Shown in pieces: positions 1 to 37,162 of a DNA stretch of 64,000 bases (position 1 is its first letter; each line of letters starts with the position of its first letter). The position numbers and the translations under genes are program-made. The stretch spans positions 29,140,001-29,204,000 of the forward strand of contig NW_027266272.1 of the NCBI RefSeq assembly GCF_022045235.1, in the 5' to 3' direction. The DNA comes from Haliotis cracherodii (lineage: Eukaryota). The notes below the pieces were generated by a model. That model saw only the letters and a program-made list of their open reading frames with translations. It was not told the DNA's origin and ran no database searches.

Positions 1-298
1 CCATGTTGCCTACTGCCACCTGCCCTTGCCAACGGTAATTTAAGGAAAGAAAAAGTTAAAGTGTAACCTATGCAAATCTTTCAAAATCGTTATATTACTC
101 ATGTTATATTTCTGTATAGCAGCAATTCTTGTAAGCAAGAACCCATACTTAACCTGAAACAAACAATTACATTAACACCAGGAACAATGACAATTGAGTT
201 TGTTTAACATAGATTACGACGGCACCTTATCATTATAAACGGAACATTTTCCCCAAGTAATTTGATTCATTAAAGCGCTAATAAAATCCTCTTTCAAG

Positions 299-540
299 AA
301 GGGTAACTCTATTTACCTATTAAACTCTACCAGAGTAGTTTCCCTTAGAATGATCTTCGCATTTCATAACTTTTAAGATCCAATCTAAACAGGCGACGTA
401 CCCAATGTTGATGTGTATATTTCACAATGTAAAGGCAGACGGAAGTGCCAAGTGATTCATAAAGTCGACGCATGCGTGGACTTGCCTTCAGTCATGGCGT
501 CATGGCAACTATTAGGCCTTCCTGTGTGTCAGCCATTTTG
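299..540 (+). promoter_or_regulatory. Putative TATA-less promoter, copy 1
   Basis: CGGAAGTG (ETS) at 440-447, palindrome ACGCATGCGT (NRF1-like) at 468-477, CTTCCTG at ~518-524 and GCCATTTTG (YY1) at 532-540. Locally CpG-rich and conserved in all four units just upstream of a GTATGT donor. Confidence 0.65.
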
Positions 541-626
541 AGAGATATCACTGGAAGTTTTCGCAGTTTTATCGTGCAAAATACCTGCTTTAAAAGTGTG
601 TACAACTTGAAGAAGTGAAGAAAACT

Positions 627-1078
627 ATGAATCCTACTAGGACAGGTATGTGAAATTGGCCTTTTTACCAGTGTTACGGTTGGATGAAGCTGTTTTAACA
701 TGTTTACAATGCATAAAATAGACGCTGATCTTTCGATCTTTCTATACTCCAATTTCAATTTTCAATGTCTGCATGTGCCTATGTGGGTCTTAATATTATG
801 GAGTTGCACAATAACAGTAGGTTGTTGTTTCTAACCTGAACAGTTGTACTAAATGTACCCGGTGTGAAAACGTAACATGATACACCCCATAATCGACTGA
901 GGTAAAGGGACATTGTCGGATCCCTGCAGACTCGTTTTCAAGACACATAGAATTAATGAATTTTGTCCTTTATCAGAAAGAATAGCCTTGATCGTAACTT
1001 CATCCTTTATTGAATACTACTTTGAGCGACACATGTGTACGTTTTATAAATGTATACTGCTCTTCAGTACTATCATAA
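627..1078 (+). other. Putative leader exon end, intron 1 (646-1067) and spliced uORF MNPTRTVLS* whose TAA overlaps the main ATG
   Basis: ATG at 627, donor CAG|GTATGT at 646 and acceptor tcttcAG|T at 1066-1067. The joined frame stops at TAA 1076-1078 inside TAATG. Confidence 0.45.
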
Positions 1079-2346
1079 TGATGAATTGCTTGGTGGTAGT
1101 CCCTGTGACCCGCTTGCCGCCCGGGCTGCCAACAGTGGTGATGGGAGATGGGACCAGATGTCTGGTAGAGAACAACACTATCTGGATACCAGCTGGTAAT
1201 CCTGTTAACTTCTCCCTGGGTGCTGGTAACCTACAGCCAAGACTCCTGCAACCTGGAGTTCAGCCATCTGTGACTGGTATCCCCCTGCCTCCTGCAGTCC
1301 AGGCACCACCTTGCAGTAGACGTAGGGAGACGATGCCTGTCAGCCAGCCGCCTGTCAGCCTGCCCAGTTCAGAGATGGACCTACAGCTGATAAGACCAGA
1401 GGTATTATTATATTTATGCTAATACATGTACCAGAATGTAACACAAAAAGTATGATTTTGTTTTTTAATCAATAAAGAATCAAGATGAGACTTTGACTGT
1501 ATCACCCATCAGGCCTTCTCCTGTGTTCTGCCCCAACTTGACCAACCGAGTCCAGTTCCTCCTTCCCAGTCTGCTAATGTTGAACCTCGAGCCATATCTT
1601 CAACAAGGAATCCCAAACCCAATTCCAAGACCCCTATCCAACTAAAGCAAAAACCTGAGCTCAAGCCCTGCAAACGCAAGCCCCGCACCTTCAGGCCAAA
1701 ACCTCAGCCAAAGCTTCGCATTCCCAAGGAGAAAGTGGGCAAGCATCAACCTGAGAGCAAGCCTTACTTTGTACCTCAGCCTCTTGGAGCTCGGCACATG
1801 AAACCCCAGAGCAAACCCCTTGGGAACCGTATCACTAAGCCCTCTGGTAGTCATGGTATCATTAAGACCTCATCTAAGCTTAGTTTTGGTGAACAGTTGT
1901 TGTCTGCTGATTGTGCTTACATAAAATCAAAGTCTGTCTTGCCAAGTACAGGATGCAAGACCTTGCCTGTCCCTGTAAAGAATGTAAAGGATAAGGTTGT
2001 TTCAACATCGGAGAGTGCTAAGTCAGGTGGTTTCACTGCTGCAACAGTAAGTGTAAATCCTGACAAGTCAGTGGACAGAGCTGAGCCTAACTCTGATGAT
2101 GAATATGATGTGGAATATCTGTATCTTACTAAACTGATTTTAAGGAAAAAGAAGAAACCCACTGCTGAGCCCAGTAAGGAGTCCCTGCCCTCACGCAAGA
2201 GGAAGTGCCCAGATGACAACAGCGAGGTGCCCCAAGCTGTGAAGCAGGCAAGACTGGAGGAGCCCCAGGACACTCTGGAGGACCTGGAAGCTCTCCTGGC
2301 TGAGTACAGCTCCAGTCTCTCATCTGGCACCAGGGACTTCTTCTAA
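1078..2346 (+). CDS. Spliced CDS join(1078..1401,1513..2346): uncharacterised ~385-aa Pro/Lys/Ser-rich, probably disordered nuclear protein
   Basis: Exon 1078-1401 (MMNCLVVVP...LQLIRPE) ends at a phase-0 GAG|GTATTA donor. The downstream frame is open from 1489 to 2346 with a phase-0 acceptor ccatcAG|GCC at 1511-1512 and a TTTGAC branch-like motif. Several paralogue differences in this frame are synonymous (gcc/gct, cta/ctt, acc/act, caa/cag). Motifs: KRKPR, RKKKK, RKRK...KQARL and DTLEDLEALLAEY. Confidence 0.72.
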
Positions 2347-2369
2347 ACACTGTAAGGGGCAGGGAACAG

Positions 2370-2445
2370 GTAGGTATAGATTAGTGTGTAGTATATAGGT
2401 TAATAATCGTACATGTGATCTTTCTCTAATCCTTTCATTGTGCAG
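2370..2445 (+). other. Putative 76-nt 3' UTR intron
   Basis: CAG|GTAGGT donor 23 nt after the stop, CTAAT branch point at ~2426-2430, pyrimidine tract and TGCAG acceptor. Confidence 0.5.
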
Positions 2446-2559
2446 TTCAACTTCAACACAGTGAACTCGTGTTTTGACCATCAGCTACCGTTTCTGTTTT
2501 ATCTACGATCTACCGAATCTAGTGCTATTATCTGTATCTGGCCATTTCCACGTCTATGG

Positions 2560-5280
2560 TGCTCTACCCCTTGTATCTATATTCCTACTTTGCCTTTATG
2601 TCCTACAGTACCCTACTCTGTCTAATCTAAATGTTGTATGTTCTACTCTACTCTGCTGTGTACTATCACACTGTACCATACCCTGCATTGCCCAACTATA
2701 TTCTCTTCTGCACTGTCCTTCGTTACTTTCTTCTACGCTGTACCTTCACCAATCCTGCTTACAGAACTCTGTACTCTCCTAATAAGCCTCAACCGTACTG
2801 CCCTTCCCCCTGTAATGTCCTACCCTCCTCTGCACTGTCCTACTCTACCCTAGCCTGTACTGGTCTACTCTACCATACTCTGTACTGTTCTATTCTACCC
2901 TCCCCTTTATTGTCCTACTCTACCCTCCCCTGTACTTTCCTACTCTACCCTGCACTGTCCTACTCTACCCTCCCCTGTACTCTCCTACCCTACCCTACTA
3001 TCCTCCTATGTACTATGCTATCCTGTACTCTACTATTCTGTAGTGTTCTACTCTTTACTGTCCTACCCTGTACTGTCCTTTTCTACCCTACCCTGTACTG
3101 TCCTACTTTACCCTACTTTACCCTACTTTGTAGTATTGTACTGTCCTACTCTATTGTTCTATTCTGTACTATCCTACCCTACCCTACAATTTACTGTCCT
3201 ACCCTACCCTATTATGTTCTGTTCTACTTTACCCTACTTTGTACTATCCTACTCTAGCCTACTCTGTATTGGCCTATCCTGTCATGTCCACAAAGGGTTG
3301 CATACAGGTAAATGACTTGGACCTAAGAAATGTAATAAGTCAATGGCAAAAGTCAATAAGTCAAATAAACAAAGATGGCGGATGCAGTATAATTTCGAAG
3401 TTCGATCTGTACTTTAAAAAAAATCCGGCATAGTTTCTGCGCACCTGGCTATCCACTGGGTCTGGGAGCAAAAATGCCATAAACATCACTTCTCATGCTC
3501 CAGACACAAGGACAACTGTCACAAGCGTGCAATGTCTCTGACCCTTTCCCCATGTTAAAGCATATTGAAAAAAATTACCTTGTACATACTTACCTTTTGT
3601 TGAAATAAACAACTTAAGACATTAATACAACGTATATCCCTGTGTTATGGGTTTTCGAACGCTGTAGAAACATTCATAATTTTCTCGCTAATGCATGAAT
3701 AACTGTAAAACATCTCATTCACTTATAAAGGACATGTTCATCTTAAAAACTAACTCTGAACTGTCCTACCCTACTCTGCATTGTCCTTAGCCTACTCTAC
3801 TCTGTACTGTCCTACTCTACCCTACTCTGTACTGTCCTACTCTACCCTACTCTGTACTGTCCTATTCCAACCTACTCTGTACTGTCCTACTCTACCCTAC
3901 TCTGTACTGTCCTACTCTACCCTACTCTGTACTGTCCTACTCTACCCTACTCTGTACTGTCCTATTCCACCCTACTCTGTACTGTCCTACTCTACCCTAT
4001 TCTGTACTGTCCTACTCTACCCTGCACTGTCCTACTCTACCCTCCCCTGTACTCTCCTACCCTACCCTACTATCCTCCTATGTACTATGCTATCCTGTAC
4101 TCTACTATTCTGTAGTGTTCTACTCTTTACTGTCCTACCCTGTACTGTCCTTTTCTACCCTACCCTGTACTGTCCTACTTTACCCTACTTTACCCTACTT
4201 TGTAGTATTGTACTGTCCTACTCTATTGTTCTATTCTGTACTATCCTACCCTACCCTACAATTTACTGTCCTACCCTACCCTATTATGTTCTGTTCTACT
4301 TTACCCTACTTTGTACTGTCCTACTCTAGCCTACTCTGTATTGGCCTATCCTGTCATGTCCACAAAGGGTTGCATACAGGTAAATGACTTGGACCTAAGA
4401 AATGTAATAAGTCAATGGCAAAAGTCAATAAGTCAAATAAACAAAGATGGCGGATGCAGTATAATTTCGAAGTTCGATCTGTACTTTAAAAAAAATCCGG
4501 CATAGTTTCTGCGCACCTGGCTATCCACTGGGTCTGGGAGCAAAAATGCCATAAACATCACTTCTCATGCTCCAGACACAAGGACAACTGTCACAAGCGT
4601 GCAATGTCTCTGACCCTTTCCCCATGTTAAAGCATATTGAAAAAAATTACCTTGTACATACTTACCTTTTGTTGAAATAAACAACTTAAGACATTAATAC
4701 AACGTATATCCCTGTGTTATGGGTTTTCGAACGCTGTAGAAACATTCATAGTTTTCTCGCTAATGCATGAATAACTGTAAAACATCTCATTCACTTATAA
4801 AGGACATGTTCATCTTAAAAACTAACTCTGAACTGTCCTACCCTACTCTGCATTGTCCTTAGCCTACTCTACTCTGTACTGTCCTACTCTACCCTACTCT
4901 GTACTGTCCTACTCTACCCTACTCTGTACTGTCCTATTCCAACCTACTCTGTACTGTCCTACTCTACCCTACTCTGTACTGTCCTACTCTACCCTACTCT
5001 GTACTGTCCTACTCTACCCTACTCTGTACTGTCCTATTCCACCCTACTCTGTACTGTCCTACTCTACCCTATTCTGTACTGTCCTACTCTACCCCACTCT
5101 GTCTTGTCCTACCCTACCCTACTCTGCATTGTCCTTAGACTACCCTACTCTGTACTGTCCTACTCTACCCTACTCTGCACTGTCCTACTCTGTACTGTCC
5201 TACTCTACCATACTCTGTACTGTCCTACTCTATCCTACTCTACCTTATGTAGTGTCCTACCATCTACCCTTCTCTCAACT
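2560..5280 (+). repeat. Satellite A (25-bp CCTACTCTGTACTGTCCTACTCTAC, built of 5-mers), interrupted by a ~480-bp non-satellite segment at ~3280-3755 and ~4352-4828
   Basis: Direct 25-bp periodicity (e.g. 3790-4020). Degenerate at the 5' edge. Confidence 0.92.
2940..5090 (+). repeat. Recent 1072-bp tandem duplication, unit 1 only
   Basis: ORF pairs 3043/4115, 3239/4311 and 3781/4853 are all offset by 1072 and nearly identical. Confidence 0.95.
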
Positions 5281-5829
5281 ATTATACTATTATACTATTA
5301 TACTATTAATCTATTAAATCTGTTCATCTCATTAGCAACCTGACACTCCTGCATTGTCCTATCTGCTACTGTCCTGTTCCTTTCTCAACAGTCGGACTGG
5401 ATATCTTTCCTTTTTCTGTCTTCTACTATTAACCATATTTCTGTTCATCTCATTACTCTCCTACTCGCTTGCGATAACAGTTTAGACGGTAGTCAAGTGG
5501 TAGCTATTTTCGGGAATTTAACATAGAGATTATGTTGAATCGTTCACTCTTTATTCAAGTAATGTGTCACTGTACGTTTTTGTAAGTTCGCGTGAAGAGT
5601 GGAAAGGGACGGCTGTGAGGGGAGGTTGGAGGCCGTTTATTTAGTATGTACTGATATACGTGTATTTATATCAAAGTTATTAATGCGTTATTCTTAATAA
5701 AATATATTTTTTCCAGTGTAAGAAGTAGTTCTGTTGTATTTAAGAACTGAAGTTGAATTGTATGGTTAGATGATGTGAAGGAAGAATGTGAGTTAGCTAA
5801 TTGCATGGTGCTCATTGAGCATCAGCTGA

Positions 5830-7060
5830 CAGACGTCATGATATACGTCTTTGTTGTGTATTTTACTGTCGAATTACCCAACAAGGTTTTTAATGGTCAT
5901 TTCCTATCAACATCATAGCTCAGAAGATAGGACACACATAATTTCTTTGATTTCTATCATGAATGCCACACAAACAGTGCATGAAGAGAACAGTTTAGCA
6001 TGAAGTGGTCAGTCAGGTCACACATTCAAATATTATTCATATATGATCGTTCCTGACATTGTTTATACTTGTAGAAGTATCAAACTTTAATTACAATCTT
6101 ATATGTCAGATTATAAGAATCAGTTATTACGAAAATTCACAAAATATGTGAACATGTATTGTATCCAAGATGGAGTGTTCAATATTTACGTCACACATGG
6201 AATATTATGGCAAGATGAAGACACGAGACTGTGTTATGTACTCATACAAAGGAAGAGATATGCTTTAGTTTGAGTGTCAGCGTGAGAATGGATACCCCTG
6301 AGGGGAAACAAATGTGGAAAGCAAATTCACGAGTGAGTGAGGAAATGGGCAAATCAATAAGCATATGCAGTGGAATATTATATCTGTATTATGGCGGCAT
6401 GTGAGGTTATCCAGTCTGAACCAGTAAAACCACGAAGACACACAACCTATCAGGATTACTGATGACTCTCCATCATGCACTATTCATTGTCGTGAAACAT
6501 TCCAAAGAGTAGAATAGGTAAAATATGTCAACTCATTAAGGATTTACAGAAAGCTGCCATTCATGATATACGTCCAGGTGATGTCTTTCAGCATGTTCAG
6601 TGTATGTTATCTTAATGGCCATTACCTATCAATGTCATGGCTCAGAAGATAGAATTCCCATAATTTCTTTGATTTCAATCATGAATGCCACACAAACAAA
6701 GCATGACGAGAAACGTTCAACATGAAGTTATCAGTGACTATACATTAAACTCACACAAATATAGCTTTGACGTTTTTGTATATCACCATGCCAGACAATG
6801 TGTATTCTTGTGTTGTTGAATCTGAGATTGAGTGCATTAAATGTTTACGCCACACTGGCAAATATATCATCGGAAGACAAGAGATGACACATGATATGTC
6901 CATTGAGACGAGACGTGTTTGAATGTGAACGTGATAATGGACACCTCTGAGGGGAGCAAACCAAATGTGGAAAGCTAATTCACGAGTGATTCAGGAAATG
7001 GGCAAATCAATAGACATATGGAGCGGATATTCTATCCATGTAGGCAATATAACATGTATT
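5830..7060. repeat. Old diverged ~0.7-kb tandem duplication in the spacer (also in unit 2, partly in unit 3)
   Basis: catgatatacgtc...gctcagaagatag...cataatttctttgattt at ~5837 and ~6562. caaatgtggaaagc...ggaaatgggcaaatcaata at ~6310 and ~6962. Confidence 0.85.
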
Positions 7061-7154
7061 GCCTCGTGCAAGCACTTTTCAAACTCAGCAGCTGAAACCA
7101 TAAGCTGATAAAACGTGCCTCACAGCTAGTCATCCTTAAAGAACTATTCATGTA

Positions 7155-7555
7155 CAGCCATTGTCACCAAGACCATCTCCAGACAAACATGGGTGACTGG
7201 TAAACTATTCTGATCTTGACTCATAATGCGTGTCACTCAGATCAACACTGAACGTAAGTTGATGTAACACACGTCACAGCTGGCCCTCCATGAAACACTT
7301 TTAATACTCGGCAGCCATTGTCACCAACGTGGTTTCAAGACAAATATGAGTGACTGGTAACCTATTCTCATCAAGACTCATAATGTGTGTCAGTCAGATA
7401 ACACTGAACGTAAGTTGATGTAACACACGTCACAGCTGGCCCTCCATAAAGCAATTTTAATACTCAGCAGCCATTGTCACCAACGTAGTCTCAAGACAAA
7501 CATGGGTGACTGGTAAGCTTTTCTTACCTCGACACATTAGGTGGGTTACTCAGAC
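7155..7555. repeat. ~157-bp tandem repeat (2.5 copies plus a degenerate upstream part)
   Basis: cagccattgtcaccaa at 7155, 7312 and 7468. Confidence 0.9.
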
Positions 7556-8139
7556 TAGATCTGATCATACATGAATATGGTATAGCAATGATGCAAGGTT
7601 GATAGCATACACTTATTCGAAGCAATACATGTTTAGGAAACAGCTTTGCTTTTTGCATTGCAAAAGTTTAAGTTCGGTTCTTGTATTTGCCAAAGACTTA
7701 ATAGTAAGAAAATGTTACACACGGGCATATGACATACTGTTACTTTCTGATATATAATATCAGAAACGTAATTAGATAATGACAGTTTTATGGTGCCAAT
7801 ATGTTTTTCTTAGTCTGACGGATAAAAAAGTAAACTTTTCTAAACACACACAGGGGCCCACTTCATATAGAAGCACCGGAGTTCCTATATTGGTTCAGCA
7901 GGCCAACATAGGATGTAAGCGGGCTAACGCAGTTGTGCCAGGCCAATATCGCATTTGACTGTGATTGCATTCCTTACATTGCAATCCCAACAAGGCGATA
8001 GACTGCTGTTATGTAAGATCGTGGATCCTGTTTCTGATATAACTGTGACATTTTTTATCTTTTTTTCTTGATCTCTTTTACTGATACTATTTTGAAACAC
8101 ATAGTTTAGGTAGTCAATTATAAATATGTCATTAAATGA

Positions 8140-8310
8140 TATAGGTCCTCGGTCAGTCATATTGGCCTGAGGCAGGCTGGCCTGACTGGACCGACGCAAT
8201 GCTTCAGGGAAAATTTCACTCAGTAAGGACCTGTAACAAGGCCTCGGACAGTCATATTGGCCCAGAAGCGTTGCCTCAGTCCAATATAGCCCACCTAGGG
8301 CCTACAACAG
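8140..8310. mobile_element. Imperfect palindromic element, possibly a MITE or DNA-transposon remnant
   Basis: ctcgg(t/a)cagtcatattggcc occurs twice, and there is a hairpin ATATTGG...CCAATAT. Partial homologues at ~21400-21475 and ~33190-33265. Family not identified. Confidence 0.3.
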
Positions 8311-8634
8311 GGATATATAATAACATAATAATATTGCATCCGTGTAACATCATGTATTCCTCCTAGTAAACTCAATACTTCTGTATCCTAGCCTAGTGGC
8401 CATGTCACGGCAGGGAACACCCGTGTGCTACTTTAGTAGACTCATTGCAAGGGTCGACGATTTGGTCTGTGGCCGATTAGGATGTGCTACACAAAATGTC
8501 GACAGCAGATTGTCTTCATATGACTATAATTTGAATTTGGAATCTCAGGGAAATACATAGGTATTAATGCACGATTGCGTTCATGGCAATGCTTAACTAC
8601 CTCTGGTATAAAGGAAATTAGGACTTTATTGAAA

Positions 8635-11600
8635 TCTCATACCCGTATGTCAGTCCTTCCACTGCAGTCCCCTTCACCTCTCATACCTCCATGTCCCCCA
8701 TACGCGTATGTCTGTCCATTCACTACAGTCCCCTTCCCCTCTCATACCTCCATGTCCCCCATACCCCTATGTGAGTCCTTCCATTGCAGTCCCCTTCCCC
8801 TCTCACACCTCCATGTCCCCCATACCCGTATGTCCGTCCTCCGACTACAGTCCCCTTTCCCTCTCATACCTCCATGTCCCCCATACAGCTTTCTCCGTCC
8901 TCCCACTACAGCCCCCTTCCCCTCTCATACCACAATGTCCCCCATACCCGTATGTCCATCCTCCCACTACAGTCCCCTTTCCCTCTCATACCTCCACGTC
9001 CCCCATACCGGTATGTCAGTCTTCCCACTACTGTCCACTTTCCCTCTCATACCTCCATGTCCAACATACCCGTATGTCAGTCCTTCCCCAAAAGTACCCT
9101 TCCCCTCTCATACCTCAATGTCCCCCATAACCTTATGTCAGTCCTCCCACTACAACCCCCTTCCCCTCTCATACCTCCGTCACCTATAGTCGTAGGTACG
9201 TCCTTCCACTACAGTCCCCTTCCCCTCTCATACCTCCATGTCCCCCATACCCGTATGTCAGTCCTTCCACTACAGTCCCCTTCCTCTCTCACACCTCCAT
9301 GTCCCAATACCTGTATGTCAGTCCTCCTACTACAGCCCCCTTCCCCTCTCACACCTCCATGTCCCCCATACCGGTATCTCAGTCCTCCCACTACTGTCCA
9401 CTTTCCCTCATACCTCAATGTCCAACATACCCGTATGTCCGTCCTCCCACCACAGTCCCCTTCCCCTCTCATACCTTCATGTTCCCCATAGCCGTATGTC
9501 AGTCCTCCCATTACAGTCCCTTTCCCCTCTCATACCTCCATGTCCCCCATACCCGTATGTCGTCCTCCCACCACAGTCCCCTTCCCCTCTCATACCTCCA
9601 TGTCCCACATACCCGTATGTCAGTCCTTCCACTACAGTCCCCATCCCCTCTCATACTACCATGTCCCCATACCCAAATGTCCGTCCTCCAACCACAGTCC
9701 CCTTCCCCTATCAAACCTCAATGTCCCCCATCCCTGTATGTCCGTCCTTCCACTGCAGTCCCCTTCCCCTTTCACACCTTCATGTCCCAATACCGGTATG
9801 TCCGTCCATCCTCTGCAGTCCCCTTCCCCTTTCTTACCTCCATGTCCCCCATACCCGTATTTCCGTCCTCCCACTACAGCCCCCTTCCTCTCTCATACCT
9901 CCATTTTCCCCATACCCGTGTATCGGTCCTCCCACTACAGTCCCCTCCCCCTCTCAAACCTCAATGTCCCCCATAACCTTATGTCAGTCCTCCCACTACA
10001 ACCCCCTTCCCCTCTCATACCTCCATGTCGGCCATACCCGTATGTCAGTCCTCCTACTACTGTCCCTTTTCCCTCTCATACCTCCAGGTCCCACATACCC
10101 GTATGTCAGTTCTTCCAGTGCAGCCCCCTTCCCCTCTCACACCTCCATGTCCCCCATACCGGTATCTCAGTCCTCCCACTACTGTCCACTTTCCCTCATA
10201 CCTCAATGTCCAACATACCCGTATGTCCGTCCTCCCACCACAGTCCCCTTCCCCTCTCATACCTCCATGTTCCTCATAGCCGTATGTCAGTCCTTCCACT
10301 ACAGTCACTTTCCCCTCTCATACCACCATGTCCCCCATACCCGTATGTCGGTCCTCCCCCCACAGTCCCCTTCCCCTCTCTTACCTCCATGCCAGCCATA
10401 CCCGTATGCGAGTCCTCCCACTACAGTCCCCTTCCCGTCTCTTACCTCCATGTCCGCCATACCCGTATATCTGTCCTCCCACCACAGTCCCCTTCCCCTC
10501 TCTTACCTCCATGTCCGCCATACCCGTATGTGAGTCCTCCCACTACAGTCCCCTTCCCGTCTCTTACCTCCATGTCCGCCATACCCGTATGTCTGTCCTC
10601 CCACTACAGTCCCCTTCGCGTCTCATACCTCCAAGTTCCCCCCGCCCGTATGTCAGTCCTCCCACTACTGTTCCCTTCCCCTCTCATACGTCCATGTCCC
10701 CCATACCGCTATGTCAGTCCTCCGACTGCAGTCCCCCTTCCCTTTCATACCTCCATGTCCCCAATACCGGTATGTCAGTGCTCCCACTGCAGTCCTCTTT
10801 CCCTCTCATAACTCCATGTCCCCCATACAGCTATGTCCGTCCTCCCACTACAGCCCCCTTCCCGTCTCATACCACAATGTCCCTAAAACCGTATGTCAGT
10901 CCCTCTTCTGCAGTCCCCTTTCCCTCTGATACCTCCATTTCACCTATACCCGTATATCCGTCCTCCCACTACAGCCCGCTTCCTCTCTCATACATCTATG
11001 TCCCTCATAGCCGTATATCTGTCCTCCCACTACAGTCCCCTTCCTCTTTCATACCCCTATGTCCCCCGTACCCGTATGTCCGTCCTCCAACTACAGTCCC
11101 CTTCCCCACTCATACCTCCATGTCCCCTTTACCCGGATGTCCGCCCTCCCACTACAGTCCCCTCCCCCTCTCATACCTCCATGTCCCCCATACCCGTATG
11201 TCCGTCCTCCCACTACAGCCACCTTCCCCTCTCATACCTCCATGTCCCCCATATCCGTATATCCGTCATCCCACTAAGGTCCCCTTCCCCTCTTATACCT
11301 CCATGTCCCACATACCCGTATATCCGTCCTCCCACTACAGCCCGCTTCCTCTCTCATACATCTATGTCCCTCTTAGCCGTATATCTGTCCTCCCACTAGA
11401 GTCCCCTTCCTCATTGATACCTCCATGTCCCTCGTACCCGTATGTCCGTCCTCCAACTACAGTCCCCTTCCCCTCTTATACCTCCATGTCCCACATACCC
11501 GTATATCCGTCCTCCCACTACAGCCCGCATCCTCTCTCATACATCTATGTCCCTCTTAGCCGTATATCTGTCCTCCCACTAGAGTCCCCTTCCTCATTGA

Positions 11601-16864: not shown

Positions 16865-16925
16865 TCGTGATAGAAAATGTATAAAGTCCGAAAAGCGATG
16901 TTACACCCACTCACTCACTCTTTCA
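16865..16925 (+). mobile_element. Degenerate SINE-like tail with (CACT)n
   Basis: cgtgatag...aaaagcgatgttacacccactcactcactc. Confidence 0.4.
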
Positions 16926-25157: not shown

Positions 25158-25371
25158 AGAGATATCACTGGAGGTGTTCGCAGTTTTATCGTGCAAAATA
25201 CGACTCTAAAAGTGTGTACGACTTGAAGAGGTAGAGAAAACAATGAATCCTACTAGAACAGGTATGTGAAATTGGCCTTTTTACCAGTGATAAGGCTGGA
25301 TGAAGCTGTTTTAACATGTTTAAAACGCATAAAATAGACGCTGATCTTTCTATACTCCAATTTTAATTTTC

Positions 25372-25373
<2 letters not shown>

Positions 25374-25402
<29 letters not shown>
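25374..25402. repeat. (TG)14 microsatellite, unit 3 only
   Basis: Direct observation. Unit 2 has tgtctgtgtgtggg at the same site. Confidence 0.95.
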
Positions 25403-25660
25403 CTTAATATTATGGAGTTTTTTCTAACCAGAACATTTGAGTTGTGCTAAATGTACCCGGTGTGAAAACTTAACATGATACACACCCCATAATCGACTTA
25501 GGGTAAGGGAAATTGTAGGATCCTTACAGACACGTTTTCAAGACATATGATTAATGAATTTTGTCTTTTATCCAAAAGAATATCGTCTTGATCAGAACTT
25601 CATCCTTTATTAAATACTACTTTGAACGACACATGTGTACGTTTTATAAATGTATACTGC

Positions 25661-25778
25661 CCTACTCTTCCTTACCCTGTACTGTGCTACTCTACCTTAC
25701 TCTTTACTATCCTACTCTACTGTCCTAGTCAGTACTGCCCTACTCTACCCTACCCTATCCCCTGCTACTCTGTACTGC
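25661..25778 (+). repeat. 118-bp satellite A insertion in intron 1 of gene copy 3
   Basis: Absent from copies 1, 2 and 4. TACTGC occurs at both junctions. Confidence 0.9.
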
Positions 25779-25786
25779 TGTTCATT

Positions 25787-27040
25787 ATGATGAATTGCTT
25801 GGTGGTAGTTCCTGTGACCCGCTTGCCCTCCGGGCTACCAACAGTGGTGATGGGAGATGGGACCAGATGTCTGGTAGGCAACAAGACTATCTGGATACCA
25901 GCTGGTAATCCGGTTAACCCCACCCTGAGTGCTGGTTACCCACAGCCAAGACTCCTGCAACCTGGAGCTCAGCCATCTGTGACTGGTACCCCCCCTGCCT
26001 CCTGCAGTCCAGGCACCATCTTGCAGTAGACGTAGGGAGATGATGCCTGTCAGCCTGCCCAGTTCAGAGATGGACCTACAGCTGATGAGACCAGAGGTAT
26101 ATTACATTGATGCTTATACATGTAGCCGAATGTAACACACACACAAAAAATAAAGTTTCTTAATCATAAAGAATCAAAATGAGACTTTGACTGTATCCCC
26201 CATCAGGCTTTCACCTGCATTCTGCCCCAACTTGACCAACCGAGTCCAGTTCCTGATTCAAAGTCTGCCCTTGTTGAAACTCCAGCCATACCATCAACAA
26301 GCAGCCCCAAACCCAATTCCAAGACCCCTATCCAGCTTAAGCAAAAACCTGAGCTCAAGCCCTGCAAACGCAAGCCCCGCACTTTCAGGCCAAAACCTCA
26401 GCCAAAGCCTCGCATTCCCAAGGAGAAAGTGAGCAAGCATCAGCCTGAAAGCAAGCCCTACTTTGTGCCTCAGCCACTTGGAGCTCAGCATATCAAAACC
26501 AAGATCAAACCCTTGGGAAGCCGTATCACTAAAGCCTCGGGTGGTCATGGTATCAATAAGTCTTCATCTAAGCTTACCTTTGGGGAACAGTTGTTGTCTG
26601 CTGATAATGCTTACATAAAGCCAAAGTCTGTCTTGCCCAGTACAGGTTGCAAGACCTTCCCTATCCCTGTTAAGAATGTAAATCATGAGATTGTTTCAGC
26701 ATCAGAGCGCGCTAAGTCAGGTGGTGTCACTGCTGCAACAGTAAGTGTAAGTCCTGACAAGGCAGTGGACAGAGCTGAACCTAACTCTGATGATGAATAT
26801 GATGTGGAATATCTGTATCTTACTAAACTGATTTTAAGGAAAAAGAAGAAACCCACTGCTGAGCCCAGTAAGGAGTCCCTGCCCTCACGCAAGAGGAAGT
26901 GCCCAGATGACAACAGCGAGGTGCCCCATGCTGTGAAGCAGGCAAGACTGGAGGAGCCCCAGGACACTCTGGAGGACCTGGAAGCTCTCCTGGCTGAGTA
27001 CAGCTCCAGTCTCTCATGTGGCACCAGGGACTTCTTCTAA
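25787..27040 (+). pseudogene. Gene copy 3 (type B), frameshifted; exons 25787-26096 and 26207-27040
   Basis: Same C7 frameshift (25989-25995), stop at 26029. The intron-1 acceptor is lost next to a satellite insertion. Confidence 0.72.
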
Positions 27041-27159: not shown

Positions 27160-29655
27160 CTATCCCTTGTATCTATATTCTCACTTTGCCTTTATGTCCT
27201 ACAGTACCCTACTTTGTTGTTAACTAATCTAAATGTTGTATGTCGTCTTCTACTCTAGTCTGCTGTGTACTGTCATACTGTACCATACCCATTGCATTGT
27301 CCAACTTTACTTTCTTCTGTACTACCCTACGTTACTTTCTTCTACACTGTACCCTTATCAATCCTGCTTACTGAACTCTGTACTATGCTAATAAGCCTCA
27401 TCTGTACTGTCCTACCCTGTAATGTCCTACCTTCCTCTGTACTGTCCTACTCTACCCTCCCTTGTACTGTCGTACTTTGTACTGTTCTATCGTACCTTAC
27501 TCTGTACTATCCTACTCTACTGTCCTGTACTGTCCTTCTCTGTACTGTTCTACTCTACGCTCCCCTGTACTCCCCTTCCATACCCTACTGTACTGCCCTT
27601 CTCTGAACTGTCCTACTCTACCCTCCCCTGTACTGTCCTATTCTACCCTAGTCTACAGTCCTACTTTGTACAATTCTATTGTACCTTACACTTACTCTTA
27701 CTATCCTACTCTACTGCCCTGTCCTGGACTGTCCTTCTCTGTACTGTTCTACCCTACTCTCCCCTGTATTCCCCTTCCATACCCTACTGTACTATCCCTC
27801 TCTGAACTGTCCTACTCTTCCCTCCCCTGTACTCTCCTACTCTACCCCCCCCCCCCCCCCCCCCCTCTTGTACTGCCCTACATTGTACAAATCTATTGTA
27901 CCTTACTCTTACTCTTACTATCCTACTCTATGGCCCTGTCCTGTACTGTCCTTCTCTGTAATTTCCTGCTCCACCCTACTGTGTTCAGTCCTTCTGTACC
28001 CTACTCTGTACTGTCCTACTGTACCCTCCCCTCTACTCTCCTATCCTAACCTACTCTACGATCCTACTCTAAACTTTCCTTCTCTGTACTGTCCTACATT
28101 ACCTTACCCTGTACTATCCTACTCTGTACTATCTCGCTGTGATATAACTAGAAAACTGTTAAAAGCAGCGTTAAACCCAACTCCCTCCCTCATTTACTCC
28201 AACTTTATCCTACTCTATCCTACTCTACCATCCTACCCTACTCTTCCCTGTACTGTCCTACCATACCCTACTCTGTACTGCCCTACTCTACACTGTTTTA
28301 CTCTTCCTTATTCTGTACGGCCCTACTCTACGATCCTACTCTGCACACTGTACTATCCTACTCTATACTACCTTACTCTGCACTATTCTACTCTGCCTTT
28401 CTCTGTACTGTACTACCCTGTACTGTCCTACTCTGTACTATCCTATTTTACTGTCCTACTGTGTACTGTTCTTCTCTACCTTACCCTGCACTATCCTACT
28501 TTACCCTACAGTGTACTGTCATACTCTTCCCTACTTTGTACTCACCTGCTCTACTCTACTCATATCCTGCACTGTCCTACTCTGTACTATCTTACCCTGC
28601 ACTATCCTACTTAACCCTACAGTGTACTGTCACACTCTACCCTACTGTACTCTCCTGCTCTACTCAACTCATATCCTGCACTGTACTTTGTACTTTTACT
28701 CTGTACTACCCTATTTTATTGTCCTACTGTTGACTGTTCTACAGCACCTTACCCTGTACTATCCTACTCTACCCTACAGTGTACTGTTCTACTGCACTCT
28801 CTCCGGTACTCTCCTACCCTACCTTGTACTGTCCTGCTGTACCCTACTATGTGCTGTCCTATTCTATCCTACTTTGTACTGTCCTACTCTACTGTCCTAC
28901 TCTGTACTGCCCTACTCTACCTTACCCTGCCCTGTGCAACTCTACCTTACTCTTTACTATCCTACTCTACTGTCCTAGTCTGTACTGCCCTACTCTACCC
29001 TACCCTATCCTGTGCTACTCTGTACTGCCCTACTCTACCCTAACCTGTCCTGTGCTACTCTCCCTTACTCTTTACTATCCTACTCAACTGTCCTAGTCTG
29101 TACTGCCCTAGTCTACCCTACCCTATCCTGTGCTACTCTACCTTACTCCTTACTATCCTACTCTACCCTTCCCTATCCTGTGCTACTCTACCTTACTCTG
29201 CAGTATACATCTCTGTACTGCCCTACTCTACCCTTTCCTGTACTGTGATACTCTACCTTATTCCTTACTAGCCTACTCTACTGTCCTAGTCTGTACTGCC
29301 CTACTCTACCCTACCCTATCCTGTGCTACTCTACCTTACGCCTTACTATCCTACTCTACCCTTCCCTAACCTGTGCTACTCTAGCTTACTCTGCAGTATC
29401 CAACTCTGTACTGCCCTACTCTACACTTCCCTGTACTGTGCTACTCTACCTCACTCCTTACTATCCTACTCTACCTTTCCCTATCCTGTGCTACTCTACC
29501 TTACGCAGCAGTATCCTACTCTACTGTCCTACTCTGTTCTGCCCTACTCTACCCTTCCCTGTACTGTGCTACTCTACCTTACTCCTTACTATCCTACTCT
29601 ACTGTCCTAGTCTATACTGTCCTATTCTAGCCTACTCTGTACTGTCCTACCCTGT
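27160..29655 (+). repeat. Satellite A, unit 3 proximal block (degenerate; poly-C at ~27846-27865)
   Basis: 5-mer and 25-mer periodicity. Confidence 0.9.
28130..28195 (+). mobile_element. Probable SINE 3' tail fragment
   Basis: atctcgctgtgatataactagaaaactgttaaaagcagcgttaaacccaactccctccctc resembles mollusc SINE ends (...AAAAGCGGCGTTAAAC followed by a tetranucleotide tail). Recognised from memory, not by search. Confidence 0.5.
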
Positions 29656-30074
29656 CATGTCCACAAAGGGCTGTATATAGGTAAATGACTTAGACGTAAG
29701 AAATGTAATAAGTCATTGGCAAAAGTCAATAAGTCAAATCATTACTTTTAAAAAATCAGGTATAGTTTCTGCGCACCTGGCTACCTGCCGGGCCTGGGAG
29801 GAATAATGCCATATGTTGAAGCATATTGAAAAAAACTTACCTCATACATACTTACCTTTTGTTGAAAAAACAAAACAACATAAGACATTAATACAACATA
29901 TATCCATGTGTTATGGCTTTTCGGACACTGAAGAAACATTCATAGTTTTTGCGCTAATCACAAATGTAAAAAACATCTCATTCACTTATAAAGGACAAGT
30001 TTATCTTAAAAACAAACCATCATCTGAGTATTTACAATTTCTGTGTGACGCCACACCCCTCGTTATAGTGCAAG

Positions 30075-30135
30075 TATTCGTGATAGAAACTGTATAAAGT
30101 CCGAAAAGCGACGTTACACCCACTCACTCACTCTT
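30075..30135 (+). mobile_element. Degenerate SINE-like tail with (CACT)n, unit 3 paralogue
   Basis: aaaagcgacgttacacccactcactcactc. Confidence 0.4.
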
Positions 30136-30149
30136 TCACTCCTACTTTA

Positions 30150-30560
30150 TCCTGCTCTTCACTGTCCTATTCTAGCCTACTCTGTACTGTCCTACCCTAA
30201 CCTACTCTGTACTGACCTACCCTACCCTACTCTGTACTGTCCTACTCTATCCTACTCTGTACTGTCCAACCCTTCCCTAGTCTGTACTGTCCTACTCTAC
30301 CCTACTCTGTACTGTCCTACTCTACCCTACTCTGTACTGTCCAATTCTAGCCTTCTCTGTACTGTCCTACCCTACCCTACTATGGACTGTCCTAGTCTGT
30401 ACTGTTCTACTCTAACTCAATCTGAACCGTCCAACCCTACCCTTCTCTGCCTTGCCCTTAGCCTACCCTACTCTGTACTGTCTTATTCTACCCTACTCTG
30501 TACTGTCCTACTCTACCCCACTCTGCACTTTCCTACTTTGTACTGTTCTACTCTACCTTA
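30150..30560 (+). repeat. Satellite A, unit 3 distal block
   Basis: 25-bp monomers. Confidence 0.9.
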
Positions 30561-33570: not shown

Positions 33571-33747
33571 CCCCAAAGGTTCATCCTCCCCACTCCCCTC
33601 TGCGTCCTCATCTCCCTCCTTATCCCTACTTTCCACTTATTCGGTACTACCAGTTCCATCCTCCTCGTCTTCCTCTCCACCGTCCCTACTTCCCTCTCCA
33701 TCCTCCCTAATTTCCTCTCCTCCCTCCCTTGCTCACGCCAATCCTCC

Positions 33748-34655
33748 TCCCTCATACTTCCATGTCCCCCATACCCGTATGTCCGTCCTGCCTCTACATT
33801 TCCTTCCCCCTCTCATACCTCCATGTCCCCCATACCCGTATGTCCGTTCTCCCACTGCAGTCCCCTTCCCCTCTCATACCTCCATGTCCCCCATACCCGT
33901 ATGTCAGTCCTCCCACGACAGCCCCATTCCCCTCTTATACCTTCATGTCCCCCTTACCCGTATGTCCGTCCCCCCACTACAGTCCCCTTCCCCTCTCATA
34001 CCTCCATGCCCCCCATACCCGTATGTCCGTCCCCCCACTACAGTCCCCTTCCCCACTCATACCTCCATGCCCCCCATACCCGTATGTCCGTCCTCCCACT
34101 ACAGTCCCCTTCCCCTCTCATACCTTCATGTCCCCACACAGGTATGTCTGTTCTCCCACTACAGCCCCCTTCCCCTCTCATACGTTGATGTCCAACTTAC
34201 CCGTATGTCCGTCCTCCCAATACAGTCCCCTTCCCCTCTCATACATTAATGTCCCCACCCAGGTATGTCTGTCCTCCCACTGCAGCCCCTTTCCCCTCTC
34301 ATACCTTGATGTCCAACTTACCCGTATGTCAGTCCTCCACTACAGCCCTTCCCCTCTCATACCTCCATGTTCCCCATACCAGTATGTCCGTCCTCCCGAT
34401 GCAGCCCCCTTCCCCTCTCACACCTCCATGTCCCCCATACCCGTATGTCAGTCCTCCCACTACAGTCCCCTTCCCCTTTCATACCTCCATGTCCCCCATA
34501 CCCGTATGTCAGTCCTCCCACTACAGTCCCCTTCCCCTTTCATACCTCCATGTCCCCCATACCCGTATGTCAGCCCTCCCACTACAGTCTACTTCCCCTC
34601 TCATAACTCCATGTCCCTATACCCGTATGTCTGTCCTCCCACTGTCTGTCCTCCC
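33748..34655 (+). repeat. Satellite B, unit 3 (~15 copies)
   Basis: 61-bp periodicity. Confidence 0.95.
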
Positions 34656-35083
34656 ATTTTTCTGCTAATCTAATTCGACACAACATATAGAAAGTGGTAT
34701 ATGGCTACTAAGGACACAAAACTAATAATATATCCGGTGCCGTTGCCTCCGACCTCCACATATAGCTTCCATCCTCTGTCATACCCCTATGTTGTCTACT
34801 GCCACCTGCCCTTGCCAACGGTAATTTAAGGAAAGAAAAAGTGTAACCTATGCAAATCTTTCAAAATCGTTATCAATAGTACTCCTTTTATATTTCTGAG
34901 AGCAGCAATTCTTGTAACCAAGAACCCACACTAAACCTGAAATAAACAATTACATTAACACCAGGAAAAATGACAATGGAGTTTATTTAACATAGAATAC
35001 GACGGCACCTTTTCATTATTAATGAAACATTTTCCCAAGTTATTTGATGATCCATTCAAGCGCTAATATAATCCTCTTTCAAG

Positions 35084-35325
35084 AAGGGTAACTCTATTTA
35101 CCTATTAAACTCTTCCAGAGTAGTTTCCCTTAGAATGATCTTCGCATTTCATAACTTTTAAGATCCAATCTAAACAGGCGACGTACCCAATGTTGATGTG
35201 TATATTTCAAAATGTAAAGGCAGACGGAAGTGCCAAGTGATTCATAAAGTCGACGCATGCGTGGACTTGCTTTAAGTAGCGGCGTCATGACAACTGTTCG
35301 GCCTTCCTGTGTGTCAGCCATTTTG
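35084..35325 (+). promoter_or_regulatory. Putative promoter, copy 4
   Basis: Same motifs as copy 1. Confidence 0.6.
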
Positions 35326-35847
35326 AGAGATATCACTGGAAGTTTTCACAGTTTTATCGTGCAAAATACGGGCTTTAAAAGTGTGTACAACTTGATGAGG
35401 TGGAGAAAACTATGAATCCTACCAGGACAGGTATGTGTCATTATCCTTTTTACCAGTGATAAAGCTGGATGAAGCTGTTTAAATATGTTTAAAAAGCATA
35501 AATAGACGCTGATCTTTCTATACTTCAATTTTAATTTTCATTGTCTGTATATGGGTGTTAATATTATGGAGTTGCACAATAACAGTAGGTTGTTGTTTCT
35601 AACCTGAACAGTTGTACTAAATGTACCCAGTGTTAAAACGTAACATGATACACACCCCATAATCGACTCAGGAACAGAGAAATTGTAGGATCCCTGCAGA
35701 CATGTTTTCAAGACACCTAGAATTAATGACTTTTGTCTTTTATCTAAAAGAATGGTCTTGATCAGAACTTCATCCTTTATTAAATACTTCTTTGAGCCTC
35801 ACGTGTTTGCGTTTTATAAATGTATACTGCTCTTCAGTACTATCATA

Positions 35848-37113
35848 ATGATGAATTGCTTGGTGGTAGTTCCTGTGACCCTCTTGCCGCCCGGGCTGCC
35901 AACAGTGGTGATGGGAGATGGGACCAGATGTCTGGTAGACAACAGCACTATCTGGATACCAGCTGGTGACGCTATTAACCTCTCCCTGGGTGCTTGTTAC
36001 CCACAGCCAATCCTCCTGCAACCTGGAGTTCAGCCATTTGTGACTGGTATCCTCCTGCCTCCTGCAGTCCAGGCACCACCTTGCAGTAGACGTAGGGAGA
36101 TGATGCCTGTCTGCCAACTGCCTGTCAGCCTGCCCAGTTCAGAGATGGACCTACAGCTGATGAGACCAGAGGTATATTATATTTATGCTAATACATGTAC
36201 CAGAATGTAACACAAAAAGTATGTTTTTCTTTCTTAATCATAAAGAATCAAAATGAGACTTTGACTGTATCACCCATCATGCCTTCTCTTGTGTTTTGCC
36301 CCGACTTGACCAACCGAGTCCAGTTCCTCCTTCCCAGTCTGCTAATGTTGAAACTCAAGCCATACCATCAACAAGCAGCCCCAAACCCATTCCAAGACCC
36401 CTATCCAGCTGAAGCCAAAACCTGAGCTCAAGCCCTGCAAACGCAGACCCTGCACTTTCAAGCCAAAACCTCAGCCAAAGCCTCGCATTCCCAAGGAGAA
36501 AGCGAGCAAGCATCAGCCTGAGTGCAAGCCCTACTTTGTGCCTCAGCCTCTTGGAACTCAGCATATGAAACCCCAGAGCAAAACCCTGGTGAACCGTATC
36601 ACTAAGCCCTCTGGTAGTCATGGTATCATTAAGACCTCATCTAAGCTTAGTTTTTGTAAACAGTTGTTGTCTGCTGATTGTGCTTACATAAAGTCAAAGT
36701 CTGTCTTGCCCAGTACAGGTTGCAAGACCTTGCCTGTCCCTGCTAAGAATGTAAATGATGAGGTTGTTTCGGCATCAGAGAGTCCTAAGTCAGGTGGTGT
36801 CATTGCTGCAACAGTAAGTGTAAGTCCTGATAAGGCAGTGGACAGGGCTGAGCCCAACTCTGAGGATGAATATGATGTGGAATATCTGTATCATACTAAA
36901 CTAATTTTAAGGAAAAAGAAGAAACCCACTACTGAGCCCAGTAAGGAGTCCCTTCCCTCACGCAAGAGGAAGTGCCCAGATGACAAAAGCGAGGTGCCCC
37001 AAGCTGTGAAGCAGGCAAGACTGGAGGATCCCCAGGACACTCTGGAGGACCTGGAAGCTCTCCTGGCTGAGTATAGCTCCAGTCTCTCGTCTGGCACCAG
37101 GGACTTCTTCTAA
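35848..37113 (+). pseudogene. Gene copy 4 (type A), disabled
   Basis: Exon 35848-36171 is intact. The acceptor is changed CAG>CAT at 36278-36280, and a 1-nt deletion near 36389 (aaacccattcc vs aaacccaattcc) makes the last exon 833 instead of 834 nt. Confidence 0.72.
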
Positions 37114-37162
37114 ACACTGTAAGGGGCAGGGGACAGGTAGGTAAAGATTAGTGTGATCTTTC

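What the first reader, a model, noticed from the sequence alone, without database searches (positions are those of the whole stretch)
1..37162. Gene-bearing macrosatellite: tandem 10-12 kb units, each carrying an orphan nuclear-protein gene flanked by satellites, abutting a large satellite block
Seen: at least four head-to-tail copies of a promoter plus spliced gene, separated by two satellite families and ending at a >26 kb satellite array. I recognise no transposase, RT or known domain in the protein. Established: ORF-bearing macrosatellites and ampliconic arrays beside heterochromatin (D4Z4/DUX4, TSPY, Drosophila Stellate) are often germline or early-embryo genes controlled by repeat silencing or genetic conflict. 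Inference: this may be an undescribed lineage-specific analogue. No homology to those genes is claimed.
Basis: partly seen in the sequence, partly recalled or inferred. Interest (0 to 1): 0.85.

Follow-up and report, generated by a model that had tools for sequence, protein, structure and literature searches.

The report
Abalone-only gene in satellite-flanked tandem arrays
The repeat is real: a black-abalone gene found only in abalones sits in 10-12 kb head-to-tail units between satellites. It is one of about 29 copies of a transcribed family coding for a disordered, basic protein that is probably nuclear; only one of the four copies in this window is intact, and nothing yet shows a germline or conflict role.

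Summary
The window is Haliotis cracherodii contig C9:29,140,001-29,204,000. It holds four head-to-tail units of 12.4, 12.2 and 10.2 kb plus a truncated fourth, 87-91% identical.

Each unit runs: gene, 25-bp CT-rich satellite, conserved spacer, 61-bp C-rich satellite. The array has seven copies and ends at a 46.5-kb 20-bp satellite.

The gene has three coding exons, not two. In copy 1 these are 627-645, 1100-1401 and 1513-2346, giving 384 aa. The same exon structure reproduces two RefSeq proteins exactly at two paralogous copies.

Contigs from four sequencing runs splice intron 1. Loose ends support the 1401|1513 junction and an alternative 1401|2145 junction that predicts a 114-aa isoform.

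Only copy 1 is intact here. Copies 2-4 carry frameshifts or a lost splice acceptor.

Genome-wide there are 29 copies in five arrays, 23 of them intact. All share a conserved roughly 150-bp promoter. The C-terminal 80 residues are under strong constraint and the linkers evolve neutrally.

No homologue was found outside Haliotis, and there is no Pfam domain, PDB match or confident fold.

The analogy with germline or conflict genes remains untested. The scan has noted other gene-bearing arrays in this genome.

The parts
1..12361 (+). Unit 1 of the tandem array: gene, 25-bp satellite, spacer, 61-bp satellite
   Evidence: Self-BLAST; piece map
440..626 (+). Core promoter and 5' UTR of copy 1. The block is >=90% conserved in all 29 genomic copies and holds ACGGAAGTG (ETS-like), CGCATGCG (NRF1-like), GCGTCATGAC (CRE-like) and GCCATTTTG (YY1-like) motifs
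   Evidence: Alignment of 29 upstream regions. RNA contig depth rises at about 468-551. Motif names come from my own knowledge and were not tested
627..645 (+). Copy 1 coding exon 1 (ATG AAT CCT ...
   Evidence: GT..AG joint 645|1100 in contigs of 4 of 4 runs. N-terminus MNP.T. shared with RefSeq proteins. Model check
1100..1401 (+). Copy 1 coding exon 2 (N-terminal conserved module GLPTVVMGDGTRCL.DNNTIWIP)
1513..2346 (+). Copy 1 coding exon 3 (basic Pro/Lys-rich middle, conserved C-terminal 80 aa, stop TAA)
   Evidence: Loose end at 1511 in run X1 fits a 1401|1513 splice
2143..2144 (+). Alternative 3' splice acceptor inside exon 3. Junction 1401|2145 shifts the frame to ...RPE-EKEETHC-stop, a 114-aa isoform
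   Evidence: Loose ends at 1402 (X4, X5) and at 2143 (clear in X2, X4 and X5; ambiguous in X1). The H. rubra RefSeq protein P0013 ends in the same ...RPEEKEETHC
2820..5241 (+). 25-bp CT-rich satellite blocks downstream of copy 1 (three blocks at an 847/1072-bp higher-order spacing)
5422..8637 (+). Non-satellite spacer conserved between units (pieces B, C, D). Includes a 156-bp x2.6 repeat at 7155-7554 and has no ORF with a family match
   Evidence: Short parts of B and C are also kept in the C21 and C56 arrays
8638..12113 (+). 61-bp C-rich satellite (57 copies) upstream of copy 2
12987..14687 (+). Copy 2 (exons 12987-13005, 13456-13743, 13854-14687). Broken by a +1 C in a C7 run at 13636-13642; also carries an in-frame 15-nt deletion
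15351..18574 (+). 25-bp satellite and its 78/143-bp variants downstream of copy 2
21638..24431 (+). 61-bp satellite upstream of copy 3
25243..27040 (+). Copy 3 (exons 25243-25261, 25809-26096, 26207-27040). Carries the same +1 C frameshift, at 25989-25995, and an insert of about 120 nt in intron 1
27427..30537 (+). 25-bp satellite family downstream of copy 3
33745..34643 (+). 61-bp satellite upstream of copy 4
35412..37113 (+). Copy 4 (exons 35412-35430, 35870-36171, 36281-37113). Intron 2 acceptor is AT instead of AG, and exon 3 has a 1-nt deletion near 36388. Unit homology stops at 37155
37174..64000 (+). 20/41-bp C-rich satellite (GC skew -0.92). Continues 19.6 kb past the window, 46.5 kb in all

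Best explanation
This is the distal part of a seven-copy tandem array of a Haliotis-restricted protein-coding gene. The family has about 29 copies in five arrays on three contigs of the black abalone genome. Each 7-13 kb unit is a self-contained transcription unit. It has a conserved TATA-less promoter and three coding exons, and it encodes a 384-aa basic (pI 9.7), Pro/Ser/Lys-rich, mostly disordered protein. That protein has three constrained modules: an N-terminal beta-hairpin-like block, a basic K/R/P block, and a C-terminal 80 residues with an acidic-aromatic motif, a KRK-type nuclear-localisation-like signal and an amphipathic helix. An internal acceptor gives a second transcript that would encode only the N-terminal module (114 aa). 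SHOWN: the array structure, the gene model, transcription and splicing of the family, motif-level purifying selection, genus restriction, and three broken copies next to the satellite. INFERRED: the arrays grew by unequal crossing-over, helped by the satellites on both sides of every gene, because each array is its own clade. INFERRED: the protein works in the nucleus as a disordered adaptor or cofactor that acts through short linear motifs; I give this functional reading about 0.4. INFERRED: the copies nearest the satellite block are decaying.
For: Array. Genome copies: one search found 31 exon-3 matches and one search found 33 exon-2 matches. These make up 29 loci in clusters C9a, C9b, C21a, C21b and C56. 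Gene model: 23 of 29 copies have ATG, GT/AG at both introns and an open frame of 376-384 aa. In all 23 intact copies exon-3 lengths differ only by multiples of 3. My models of L007 and L004 are letter-identical to RefSeq XP_071102220.1 and XP_071102205.1. RNA: the 645|1100 GT..AG joint appears in contigs of 4 of 4 runs from 4 studies. Exon bins are several-fold deeper than intron bins. Loose ends fit 1401|1513 and 1401|2145. Selection: overall dN/dS is 0.5-0.7. In sliding windows pN/pS is 0.11-0.20 over the C-terminal 80 aa at normal pS (about 0.15), 0.23 over residues 166-195, and about 1 or more in the linkers. Promoter: a block of about 150 bp is >=90% conserved in all 29 copies, while the introns and spacers of other arrays barely align. 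Unit layout is the same in the C21 and C56 arrays: gene, CT-rich minisatellite, pieces B and C, 70-bp C-rich minisatellite. Each array forms a clade, with H. rufescens orthologues nested inside. Disorder: AlphaFold2 mean pLDDT is 42, with only three short strands and three helices. Not an assembly artefact: copies differ by 4-13%, and the HiFi assembly has an indel QV of 48.7 (PMC9709981).
Against: No tissue, stage or protein-level evidence exists. The runs are Logan contigs whose RNA status is a guess, supported only by the spliced joints. Contigs at 85-99% identity cannot say which paralogue is expressed, so expression of the window's own copy 1 is not shown. The canonical 1401|1513 splice rests on one 15-nt loose end plus RefSeq models. 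Nuclear localisation and motif function are read from sequence only. Overall dN/dS of 0.5-0.7 is high. Three of the four window copies are broken. The shared +1 C could in principle be a homopolymer error, though about 0.5 such errors are expected in all 29 CDS together.
Confidence: 0.72

Rival explanations
1. One reading: a lineage-specific analogue of D4Z4/DUX4, TSPY or Stellate. On this view it is a germline or early-embryo gene whose dose and expression are governed by repeat-induced silencing, or which takes part in genetic conflict.
For: The multi-copy tandem layout next to satellites. A genus-restricted, fast-evolving protein whose linker windows have pN/pS of 1.0-1.8. Exon CpG o/e of 0.20-0.24 against 0.81 in the promoter, which fits germline gene-body methylation but could also reflect amino-acid composition.
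Against: Nothing here gives tissue, stage, small RNAs or chromatin state. Units are old (dS 0.03-0.10 within the array), not homogenised. An ordinary gene lies 16 kb beyond the satellite. The promoter motifs look like those of broadly expressed genes; that is a reading from memory, not a test.
Confidence: 0.12
2. A dying array: the units are relics of a once-functional gene, and the open frames persist only because the duplications are recent.
For: Three of the four copies in the window and 6 of 29 genome-wide are broken. Overall dN/dS is 0.5-0.7.
Against: 23 intact copies persist at between-array dS of 0.13-0.20. In those 23 intact copies all exon-3 length changes are multiples of 3. pN/pS is 0.11-0.2 in the C-terminal block. 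The promoter is conserved. Orthologues keep the same exon structure in H. rufescens, H. rubra and H. asinina. The family is transcribed and spliced.
Confidence: 0.08
3. Cargo or a gene of a large transposable element or virus that inserts in tandem, for example a Helitron-like element carrying satellites.
For: Satellites flank the gene in every unit. Tc1/mariner remnants lie in neighbouring spacers. One H. rubra model, P0013, fuses the N-terminal module to what I take, from memory and without a test, to be the tail of a pogo-like DDE transposase.
Against: No RT, transposase, integrase or viral domain lies inside the unit. Copies occur only in five tandem clusters and are never dispersed. The mariner pieces are secondary insertions that lengthen single units. 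There were no Rfam hits.
Confidence: 0.03
4. An assembly artefact: a smaller locus falsely expanded.
For: Satellite-rich regions are hard to assemble.
Against: Copies differ by 4-13%, with unit-specific indels and TE insertions. The window has no gaps. The assembly is 37x HiFi. An H. rufescens protein (P0001) groups inside this array's clade, and H. rufescens has several near-identical paralogues on one contig in the C56-type clade.
Confidence: 0.02

Closest known systems
Gene-bearing macrosatellites of vertebrates (D4Z4/DUX4, RS447/USP17, CT47, TSPY arrays)
   Same: Head-to-tail kb-scale units, each with its own promoter and complete ORF. The gene is lineage-restricted, the arrays lie next to other tandem repeats, and some units are defective.
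   Different: Units here are longer (7-13 kb) and mostly satellite. They are much more diverged (87-96%). There are few copies per array (2-9). The genes are spliced. There is no homology to any of those genes, and no evidence of copy-number polymorphism or repeat-dependent silencing.
Ordinary tandemly arrayed gene families that grow by unequal crossing-over
   Same: Each array forms its own clade with recent local duplicates; the C21a copies are identical or nearly so. Orthologous arrays exist in a sister species. Intact and broken members are mixed.
   Different: Every unit keeps the same two minisatellite families at the same positions. Every cluster is followed by the same 20-bp satellite in the same orientation. 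That is not a usual feature of tandem gene clusters.
Disordered nuclear cofactors such as LRIF1, NPAT and ARID2 tails (nearest language-model look-alikes)
   Same: Basic, Pro/Ser/Lys-rich and low in complexity, with short conserved motifs and KRK-type signals.
   Different: Atlas scores of 0.75-0.81 are at the level that shuffled sequences reach. No Pfam hit at all came at E <= 1 for the window's own exons, and at E <= 10 the eight family proteins gave only two single-member hits to unrelated families. This is a resemblance of composition, not a family membership.
Other gene-bearing tandem arrays noted by this scan in the same genome (PRD-class homeobox arrays, a 2.3-kb orphan gene array)
   Same: Same genome, same head-to-tail architecture with intact orphan or lineage-specific genes.
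   Different: A different protein with no homeobox. Units are several times longer because of the internal satellites.

Membership tests
Macrosatellite (D4Z4-type, gene-bearing) | Head-to-tail tandem units of kb size | tested here: met
   Units of 12.36, 12.25 and 10.18 kb, all on the + strand
Macrosatellite (D4Z4-type, gene-bearing) | High inter-unit identity maintained by concerted evolution | tested here: inconclusive
   Identity is 87-91% between window units and 96% between the upstream units, with within-array dS of 0.03-0.10. Array C21a has identical copies. Each array forms a clade, but that can come from local duplication alone.
Macrosatellite (D4Z4-type, gene-bearing) | Copy-number polymorphism among individuals | not testable with these tools
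   Needs population long-read or depth data
Macrosatellite (D4Z4-type, gene-bearing) | Repeat-dependent chromatin silencing of the embedded gene | not testable with these tools
   No methylation, small-RNA or chromatin data. CpG o/e is only a hint.
Tandemly arrayed protein-coding gene family | Each unit holds a complete gene with promoter, splice sites and ORF, and most copies are intact | tested here: met
   23 of 29 copies are intact. The promoter is conserved in all 29.
Tandemly arrayed protein-coding gene family | Transcribed and spliced | tested here: met
   Intron 1 joint in 4 of 4 runs; exon depth exceeds intron depth. This holds at family level, not per copy.
Tandemly arrayed protein-coding gene family | Purifying selection on the product | tested here: met
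   pN/pS is 0.11-0.23 in the conserved modules at normal pS. In the 23 intact copies, exon-3 length changes are in multiples of 3.
Transposable element or viral gene | RT, transposase, integrase or capsid domain, terminal repeats, dispersed copies | tested here: not met
   No such domain in the unit. Copies lie only in five clusters.
Any described protein family (Pfam, PDB) | Significant sequence or profile match | tested here: not met
   Pfam gave no hit at E <= 1 for the window's exons; at E <= 10 only two single-member hits to unrelated families, best E 0.23, among the eight family proteins. A PDB profile search gave no hits at E <= 10. A profile search of 1.84 billion representatives found only Haliotis proteins. 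The C-terminal module alone at E <= 10 found only Haliotis proteins.

The most novel reading that the evidence does not exclude
The gene and its satellites form one co-amplified module. The same 20-bp C-rich satellite follows all five clusters of the family in the genes' orientation, and the same two minisatellite families sit at fixed places in every unit. The basic, disordered protein might therefore act on these very repeats, as a satellite-binding or heterochromatin-organising factor that co-evolves with them. The broken copies next to the satellite blocks would then reflect a position effect.
Probability: 0.07. Interest if true: 0.8.

Novelty: new member of a known kind. Interest (0 to 1): 0.4.

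Why it matters
This gives abalone genomics a cleanly defined orphan family found only in the genus. The exon structure is corrected, and there is a copy-by-copy catalogue of 23 intact and 6 broken copies. The current RefSeq names ('titin-like', 'TonB-like', 'IgA1 protease-like') are artefacts of composition. The family is a tractable case for asking how new genes are amplified together with satellites. The fixed association of every cluster with one satellite family is unusual and can be tested. As it stands, this is one more tandemly amplified lineage-specific gene in a genome where the scan has noted several.

Tried and rejected
- Pfam scans of the exons and of eight family members gave nothing believable.
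- A PDB profile search gave no hits.
- The HMMER profile search of 1.84 billion representatives, a word-indexed search of the whole exon 3, and a search of the C-terminal module alone all returned only Haliotis proteins.
- The AlphaFold2 model has pLDDT 42, so I ran no fold search; it would be meaningless.
- ESM Atlas look-alikes (NPAT, ARID2, LRIF1, PWWP2A) score 0.75-0.81, which is chance level. I rejected them as family assignments.
- My own recollection that the N-terminus resembles LRIF1 and that the C-terminal ...TRDFF resembles a PIP box was not borne out by any test and is dropped.
- Rfam found nothing in 1-38000.
- Literature searches for the RefSeq accessions, the LOC names and Haliotis satellites found nothing on this family.
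- The quadruplex/i-motif pattern density in the satellites is low, 1.4 per kb in the 20-bp satellite and none elsewhere, so I did not pursue it.
- The findings index by sequence was blank.
- No protein-complex job was run, because no binding claim is made.
- I sent no joined spliced model to any search, fold or look-up tool. Exons were searched separately by reference, and whole-protein work used RefSeq proteins returned by the searches. Exons were joined only inside local scripts for frame checks, dN/dS and trees.
Full report
**What the window is.** The genome search places the window at G000:C9:29,140,001-29,204,000 of a 1.18-Gb genome with 80 contigs. Contig lengths of 30,868,143 and 4,716,365 equal those recorded for two Haliotis cracherodii RefSeq proteins. 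Two of my gene models are letter-identical to H. cracherodii proteins XP_071102220.1 and XP_071102205.1. The genome is therefore the black abalone HiFi/Omni-C assembly, which has 37x coverage and an indel QV of 48.7 (PMC9709981).

**The observation.**
- Self-BLAST shows that 3-2411 recurs at 12362-14752, at 24610-27107 (with an insert of about 120 nt) and at 34789-37155. Identity is 87-91%.
- The spacer pieces 5422-7067 and 7097-7844 recur in register.
- TRF finds a 25-bp CT-rich satellite after each gene segment and a 61-bp C-rich satellite before the next.
- From 37174 a 20/41-bp C-rich satellite runs to the window end, with GC skew about -0.92.
- With 60 kb fetched on each side, the array has three more copies upstream, seven in all. 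One unit is doubled in length by an insertion of about 10 kb that holds a Tc1/mariner remnant.
- The terminal satellite is 46.5 kb long. A chondroitin GalNAc-transferase exon lies 16 kb beyond it.

**The gene model.**
- RefSeq proteins of four Haliotis species, found with exon 3 alone, begin MNP.T..PV.RL.
- The copy 1 model is 627-645, 1100-1401 and 1513-2346, which gives 384 aa.
- I laid the contigs of four runs from four studies on 300-2800. These runs are only guessed to be RNA. All four give the GT..AG joint 645|1100, and their exon bins are several-fold deeper than their intron bins. The runs therefore contain spliced RNA of this family.
One loose end in run X1 carries the last 15 letters of exon 2 before position 1511. 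The RefSeq models that my three-exon structure reproduces exactly add support.
- Loose ends at 1402 (runs X4 and X5) and at 2143 (clear in X2, X4 and X5; the X1 consensus is ambiguous) show a second junction, 1401|2145. It uses an AG inside exon 3, shifts the frame and stops after EKEETHC. The H. rubra protein P0013 ends in exactly ...RPEEKEETHC. A 114-aa isoform holding only the N-terminal module is therefore likely.
- The lower contig depth over 1513-2144 in all four runs hints that this isoform may be abundant. The tool warns that contig depth cannot rank parts of a gene, so I treat this only as a hint.

**State of the four copies.**
- Copy 1 is intact.
- Copies 2 and 3 share a +1 C in a C7 run of exon 2, at 13636-13642 and 25989-25995. 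They also share an in-frame 15-nt deletion.
- Copy 4 has AT in place of the intron 2 acceptor and a 1-nt deletion near 36388.
- At the assembly's indel QV, about 0.5 false frameshifts are expected over all 29 coding sequences, so most of these lesions are real (inference).

**The family in the genome.**
- Exon 3 finds 31 matches and exon 2 finds 33. Together they make up 29 loci in five clusters:
  - C9a, this array, 7 copies;
  - C9b, 2 copies;
  - C21a, 9 copies;
  - C21b, 6 copies, two of them inverted;
  - C56, 6 copies.
- Twenty-three loci have a start codon, canonical splice sites and an open frame of 376-384 aa. In all of those intact copies exon-3 lengths differ only by multiples of three.
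- All six broken copies are the members nearest the satellite in C9a and C21b.
- Units in C21a and C56 are 7-8 kb but keep the same order: gene, CT-rich 50-bp minisatellite, short remnants of spacer pieces B and C, and a 70-bp C-rich minisatellite.
- Each array forms a clade, with H. rufescens proteins nested in two of them. The arrays therefore predate that speciation and have grown locally.

**Selection.**
- Nei-Gojobori dN/dS is 0.5-0.7 overall.
- It is strongly uneven along the protein. pN/pS is 0.11-0.20 over the last 80 residues at pS of about 0.15. It is 0.23 over the basic block at 166-195 and 0.43-0.45 over the N-terminal block. In the linkers it is 0.9-1.8.
- Because pS is normal where pN is low, the constraint acts on the long reading frame, not on the RNA.
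- A block of about 150 bp upstream is >=90% conserved in all 29 copies, although the introns and spacers of other arrays hardly align.
- From memory, that block contains ETS-, NRF1-, CRE- and YY1-like motifs. I did not test this.
- Exon CpG o/e is 0.20-0.24 against 0.81 in the promoter. This fits germline gene-body methylation, but amino-acid composition confounds it.

**What the protein is.**
- There is no Pfam family, no PDB relative and no homologue outside Haliotis by word-indexed or exhaustive profile search.
- AlphaFold2 with the family alignment gives pLDDT 42. It shows only a small N-terminal three-stranded element and three short helices.
- The protein is basic (pI 9.7) and rich in Pro, Ser and Lys. 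It carries KRK-type clusters.
- From these features I infer a nuclear, disordered adaptor that acts through short motifs. This is an inference, and I rate it at about 0.4.
- Language-model look-alikes are disordered nuclear proteins, but their scores are at chance level.

**The satellites.** The 20-bp satellite recurs at 72-82% identity only next to the five clusters. In each case it lies downstream of the genes and in their orientation. It also occurs, inverted, at the very end of contig C9. Weaker relatives, at 65-70% identity, are scattered on other contigs. One reading is that the clusters arose by duplication of blocks that included the satellite. Another is that the satellite keeps arising from array spacers. 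I could not decide between the two.

**Comparison and verdict.**
- In structure this is a gene-bearing tandem array, and in that sense it is like D4Z4, TSPY or CT47.
- It fails or leaves open the features that make those systems special. Homogenisation is only partial. Copy-number polymorphism and repeat silencing could not be tested.
- It is best filed as a tandemly arrayed, genus-restricted gene family with unusually constant satellite partners.
- Members are already auto-annotated in RefSeq but are not described in the searched literature.
- The scan's own notes list several other gene-bearing arrays in this genome, so the architecture is not rare here. One of them, s1-829589 (six copies over about 39.8 kb), may be the C56 array of this same family. 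I did not test that.

Noticed in passing
window 37174-64000, and G000 C21:4636737-4645241, C21:4688034-4691259, C21:4297622-4298981, C56:35752040-35754494, C9:29801616-29802838, C9:30862915-30868101: The 20-bp C-rich satellite recurs at 72-82% identity only beside the five clusters of this gene family, always downstream and in the genes' orientation. It also occurs, inverted, at the very end of contig C9. Weaker relatives are scattered elsewhere.
   Followed up: partly
window 12987-37113 and C21:4673858-4693944: All six broken copies of the 29 are the satellite-proximal members of arrays C9a and C21b. The same +1 C in the same C-run arose separately in C9a (copies 2 and 3) and in C21b (L016).
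   Followed up: partly
L035:8182-9060 (-) and L032:7230-7628 (+), upstream of the window: Tc1/mariner transposase remnants (HTH_Tnp_Tc3_2 and DDE_3; a paired-box-like HTH) lie inside spacers of upstream units. One sits in an insertion of about 10 kb that doubles a unit's length.
   Followed up: partly
L040:6101-7252 (+) and L042:9207-9998 (-), downstream of the window: A chondroitin N-acetylgalactosaminyltransferase exon (Pfam CHGN, E 4e-100) lies 16 kb beyond the satellite block. An ORF with a MULE transposase domain lies further on.
   Followed up: no
window 7155-7554 and 32149-32518: A 156-bp repeat of 2.4-2.6 copies lies inside the conserved spacer piece C of units 1 and 3.
   Followed up: no
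window 1917-2330 (-): A 137-aa antisense ORF overlaps exon 3 and recurs in the other copies. It is probably a by-product of the sense frame's composition.
   Followed up: no
window 25660-25782: Copy 3 has an insert of about 120 nt in intron 1. An ORF across it reads like the 25-bp satellite.
   Followed up: no
P0013 (H. rubra XP_046563378.1): This RefSeq model fuses what looks, from memory and without a test, like the tail of a pogo-type DDE transposase to the family's N-terminal module, and it uses the alternative 1401|2145-type junction.
   Followed up: no
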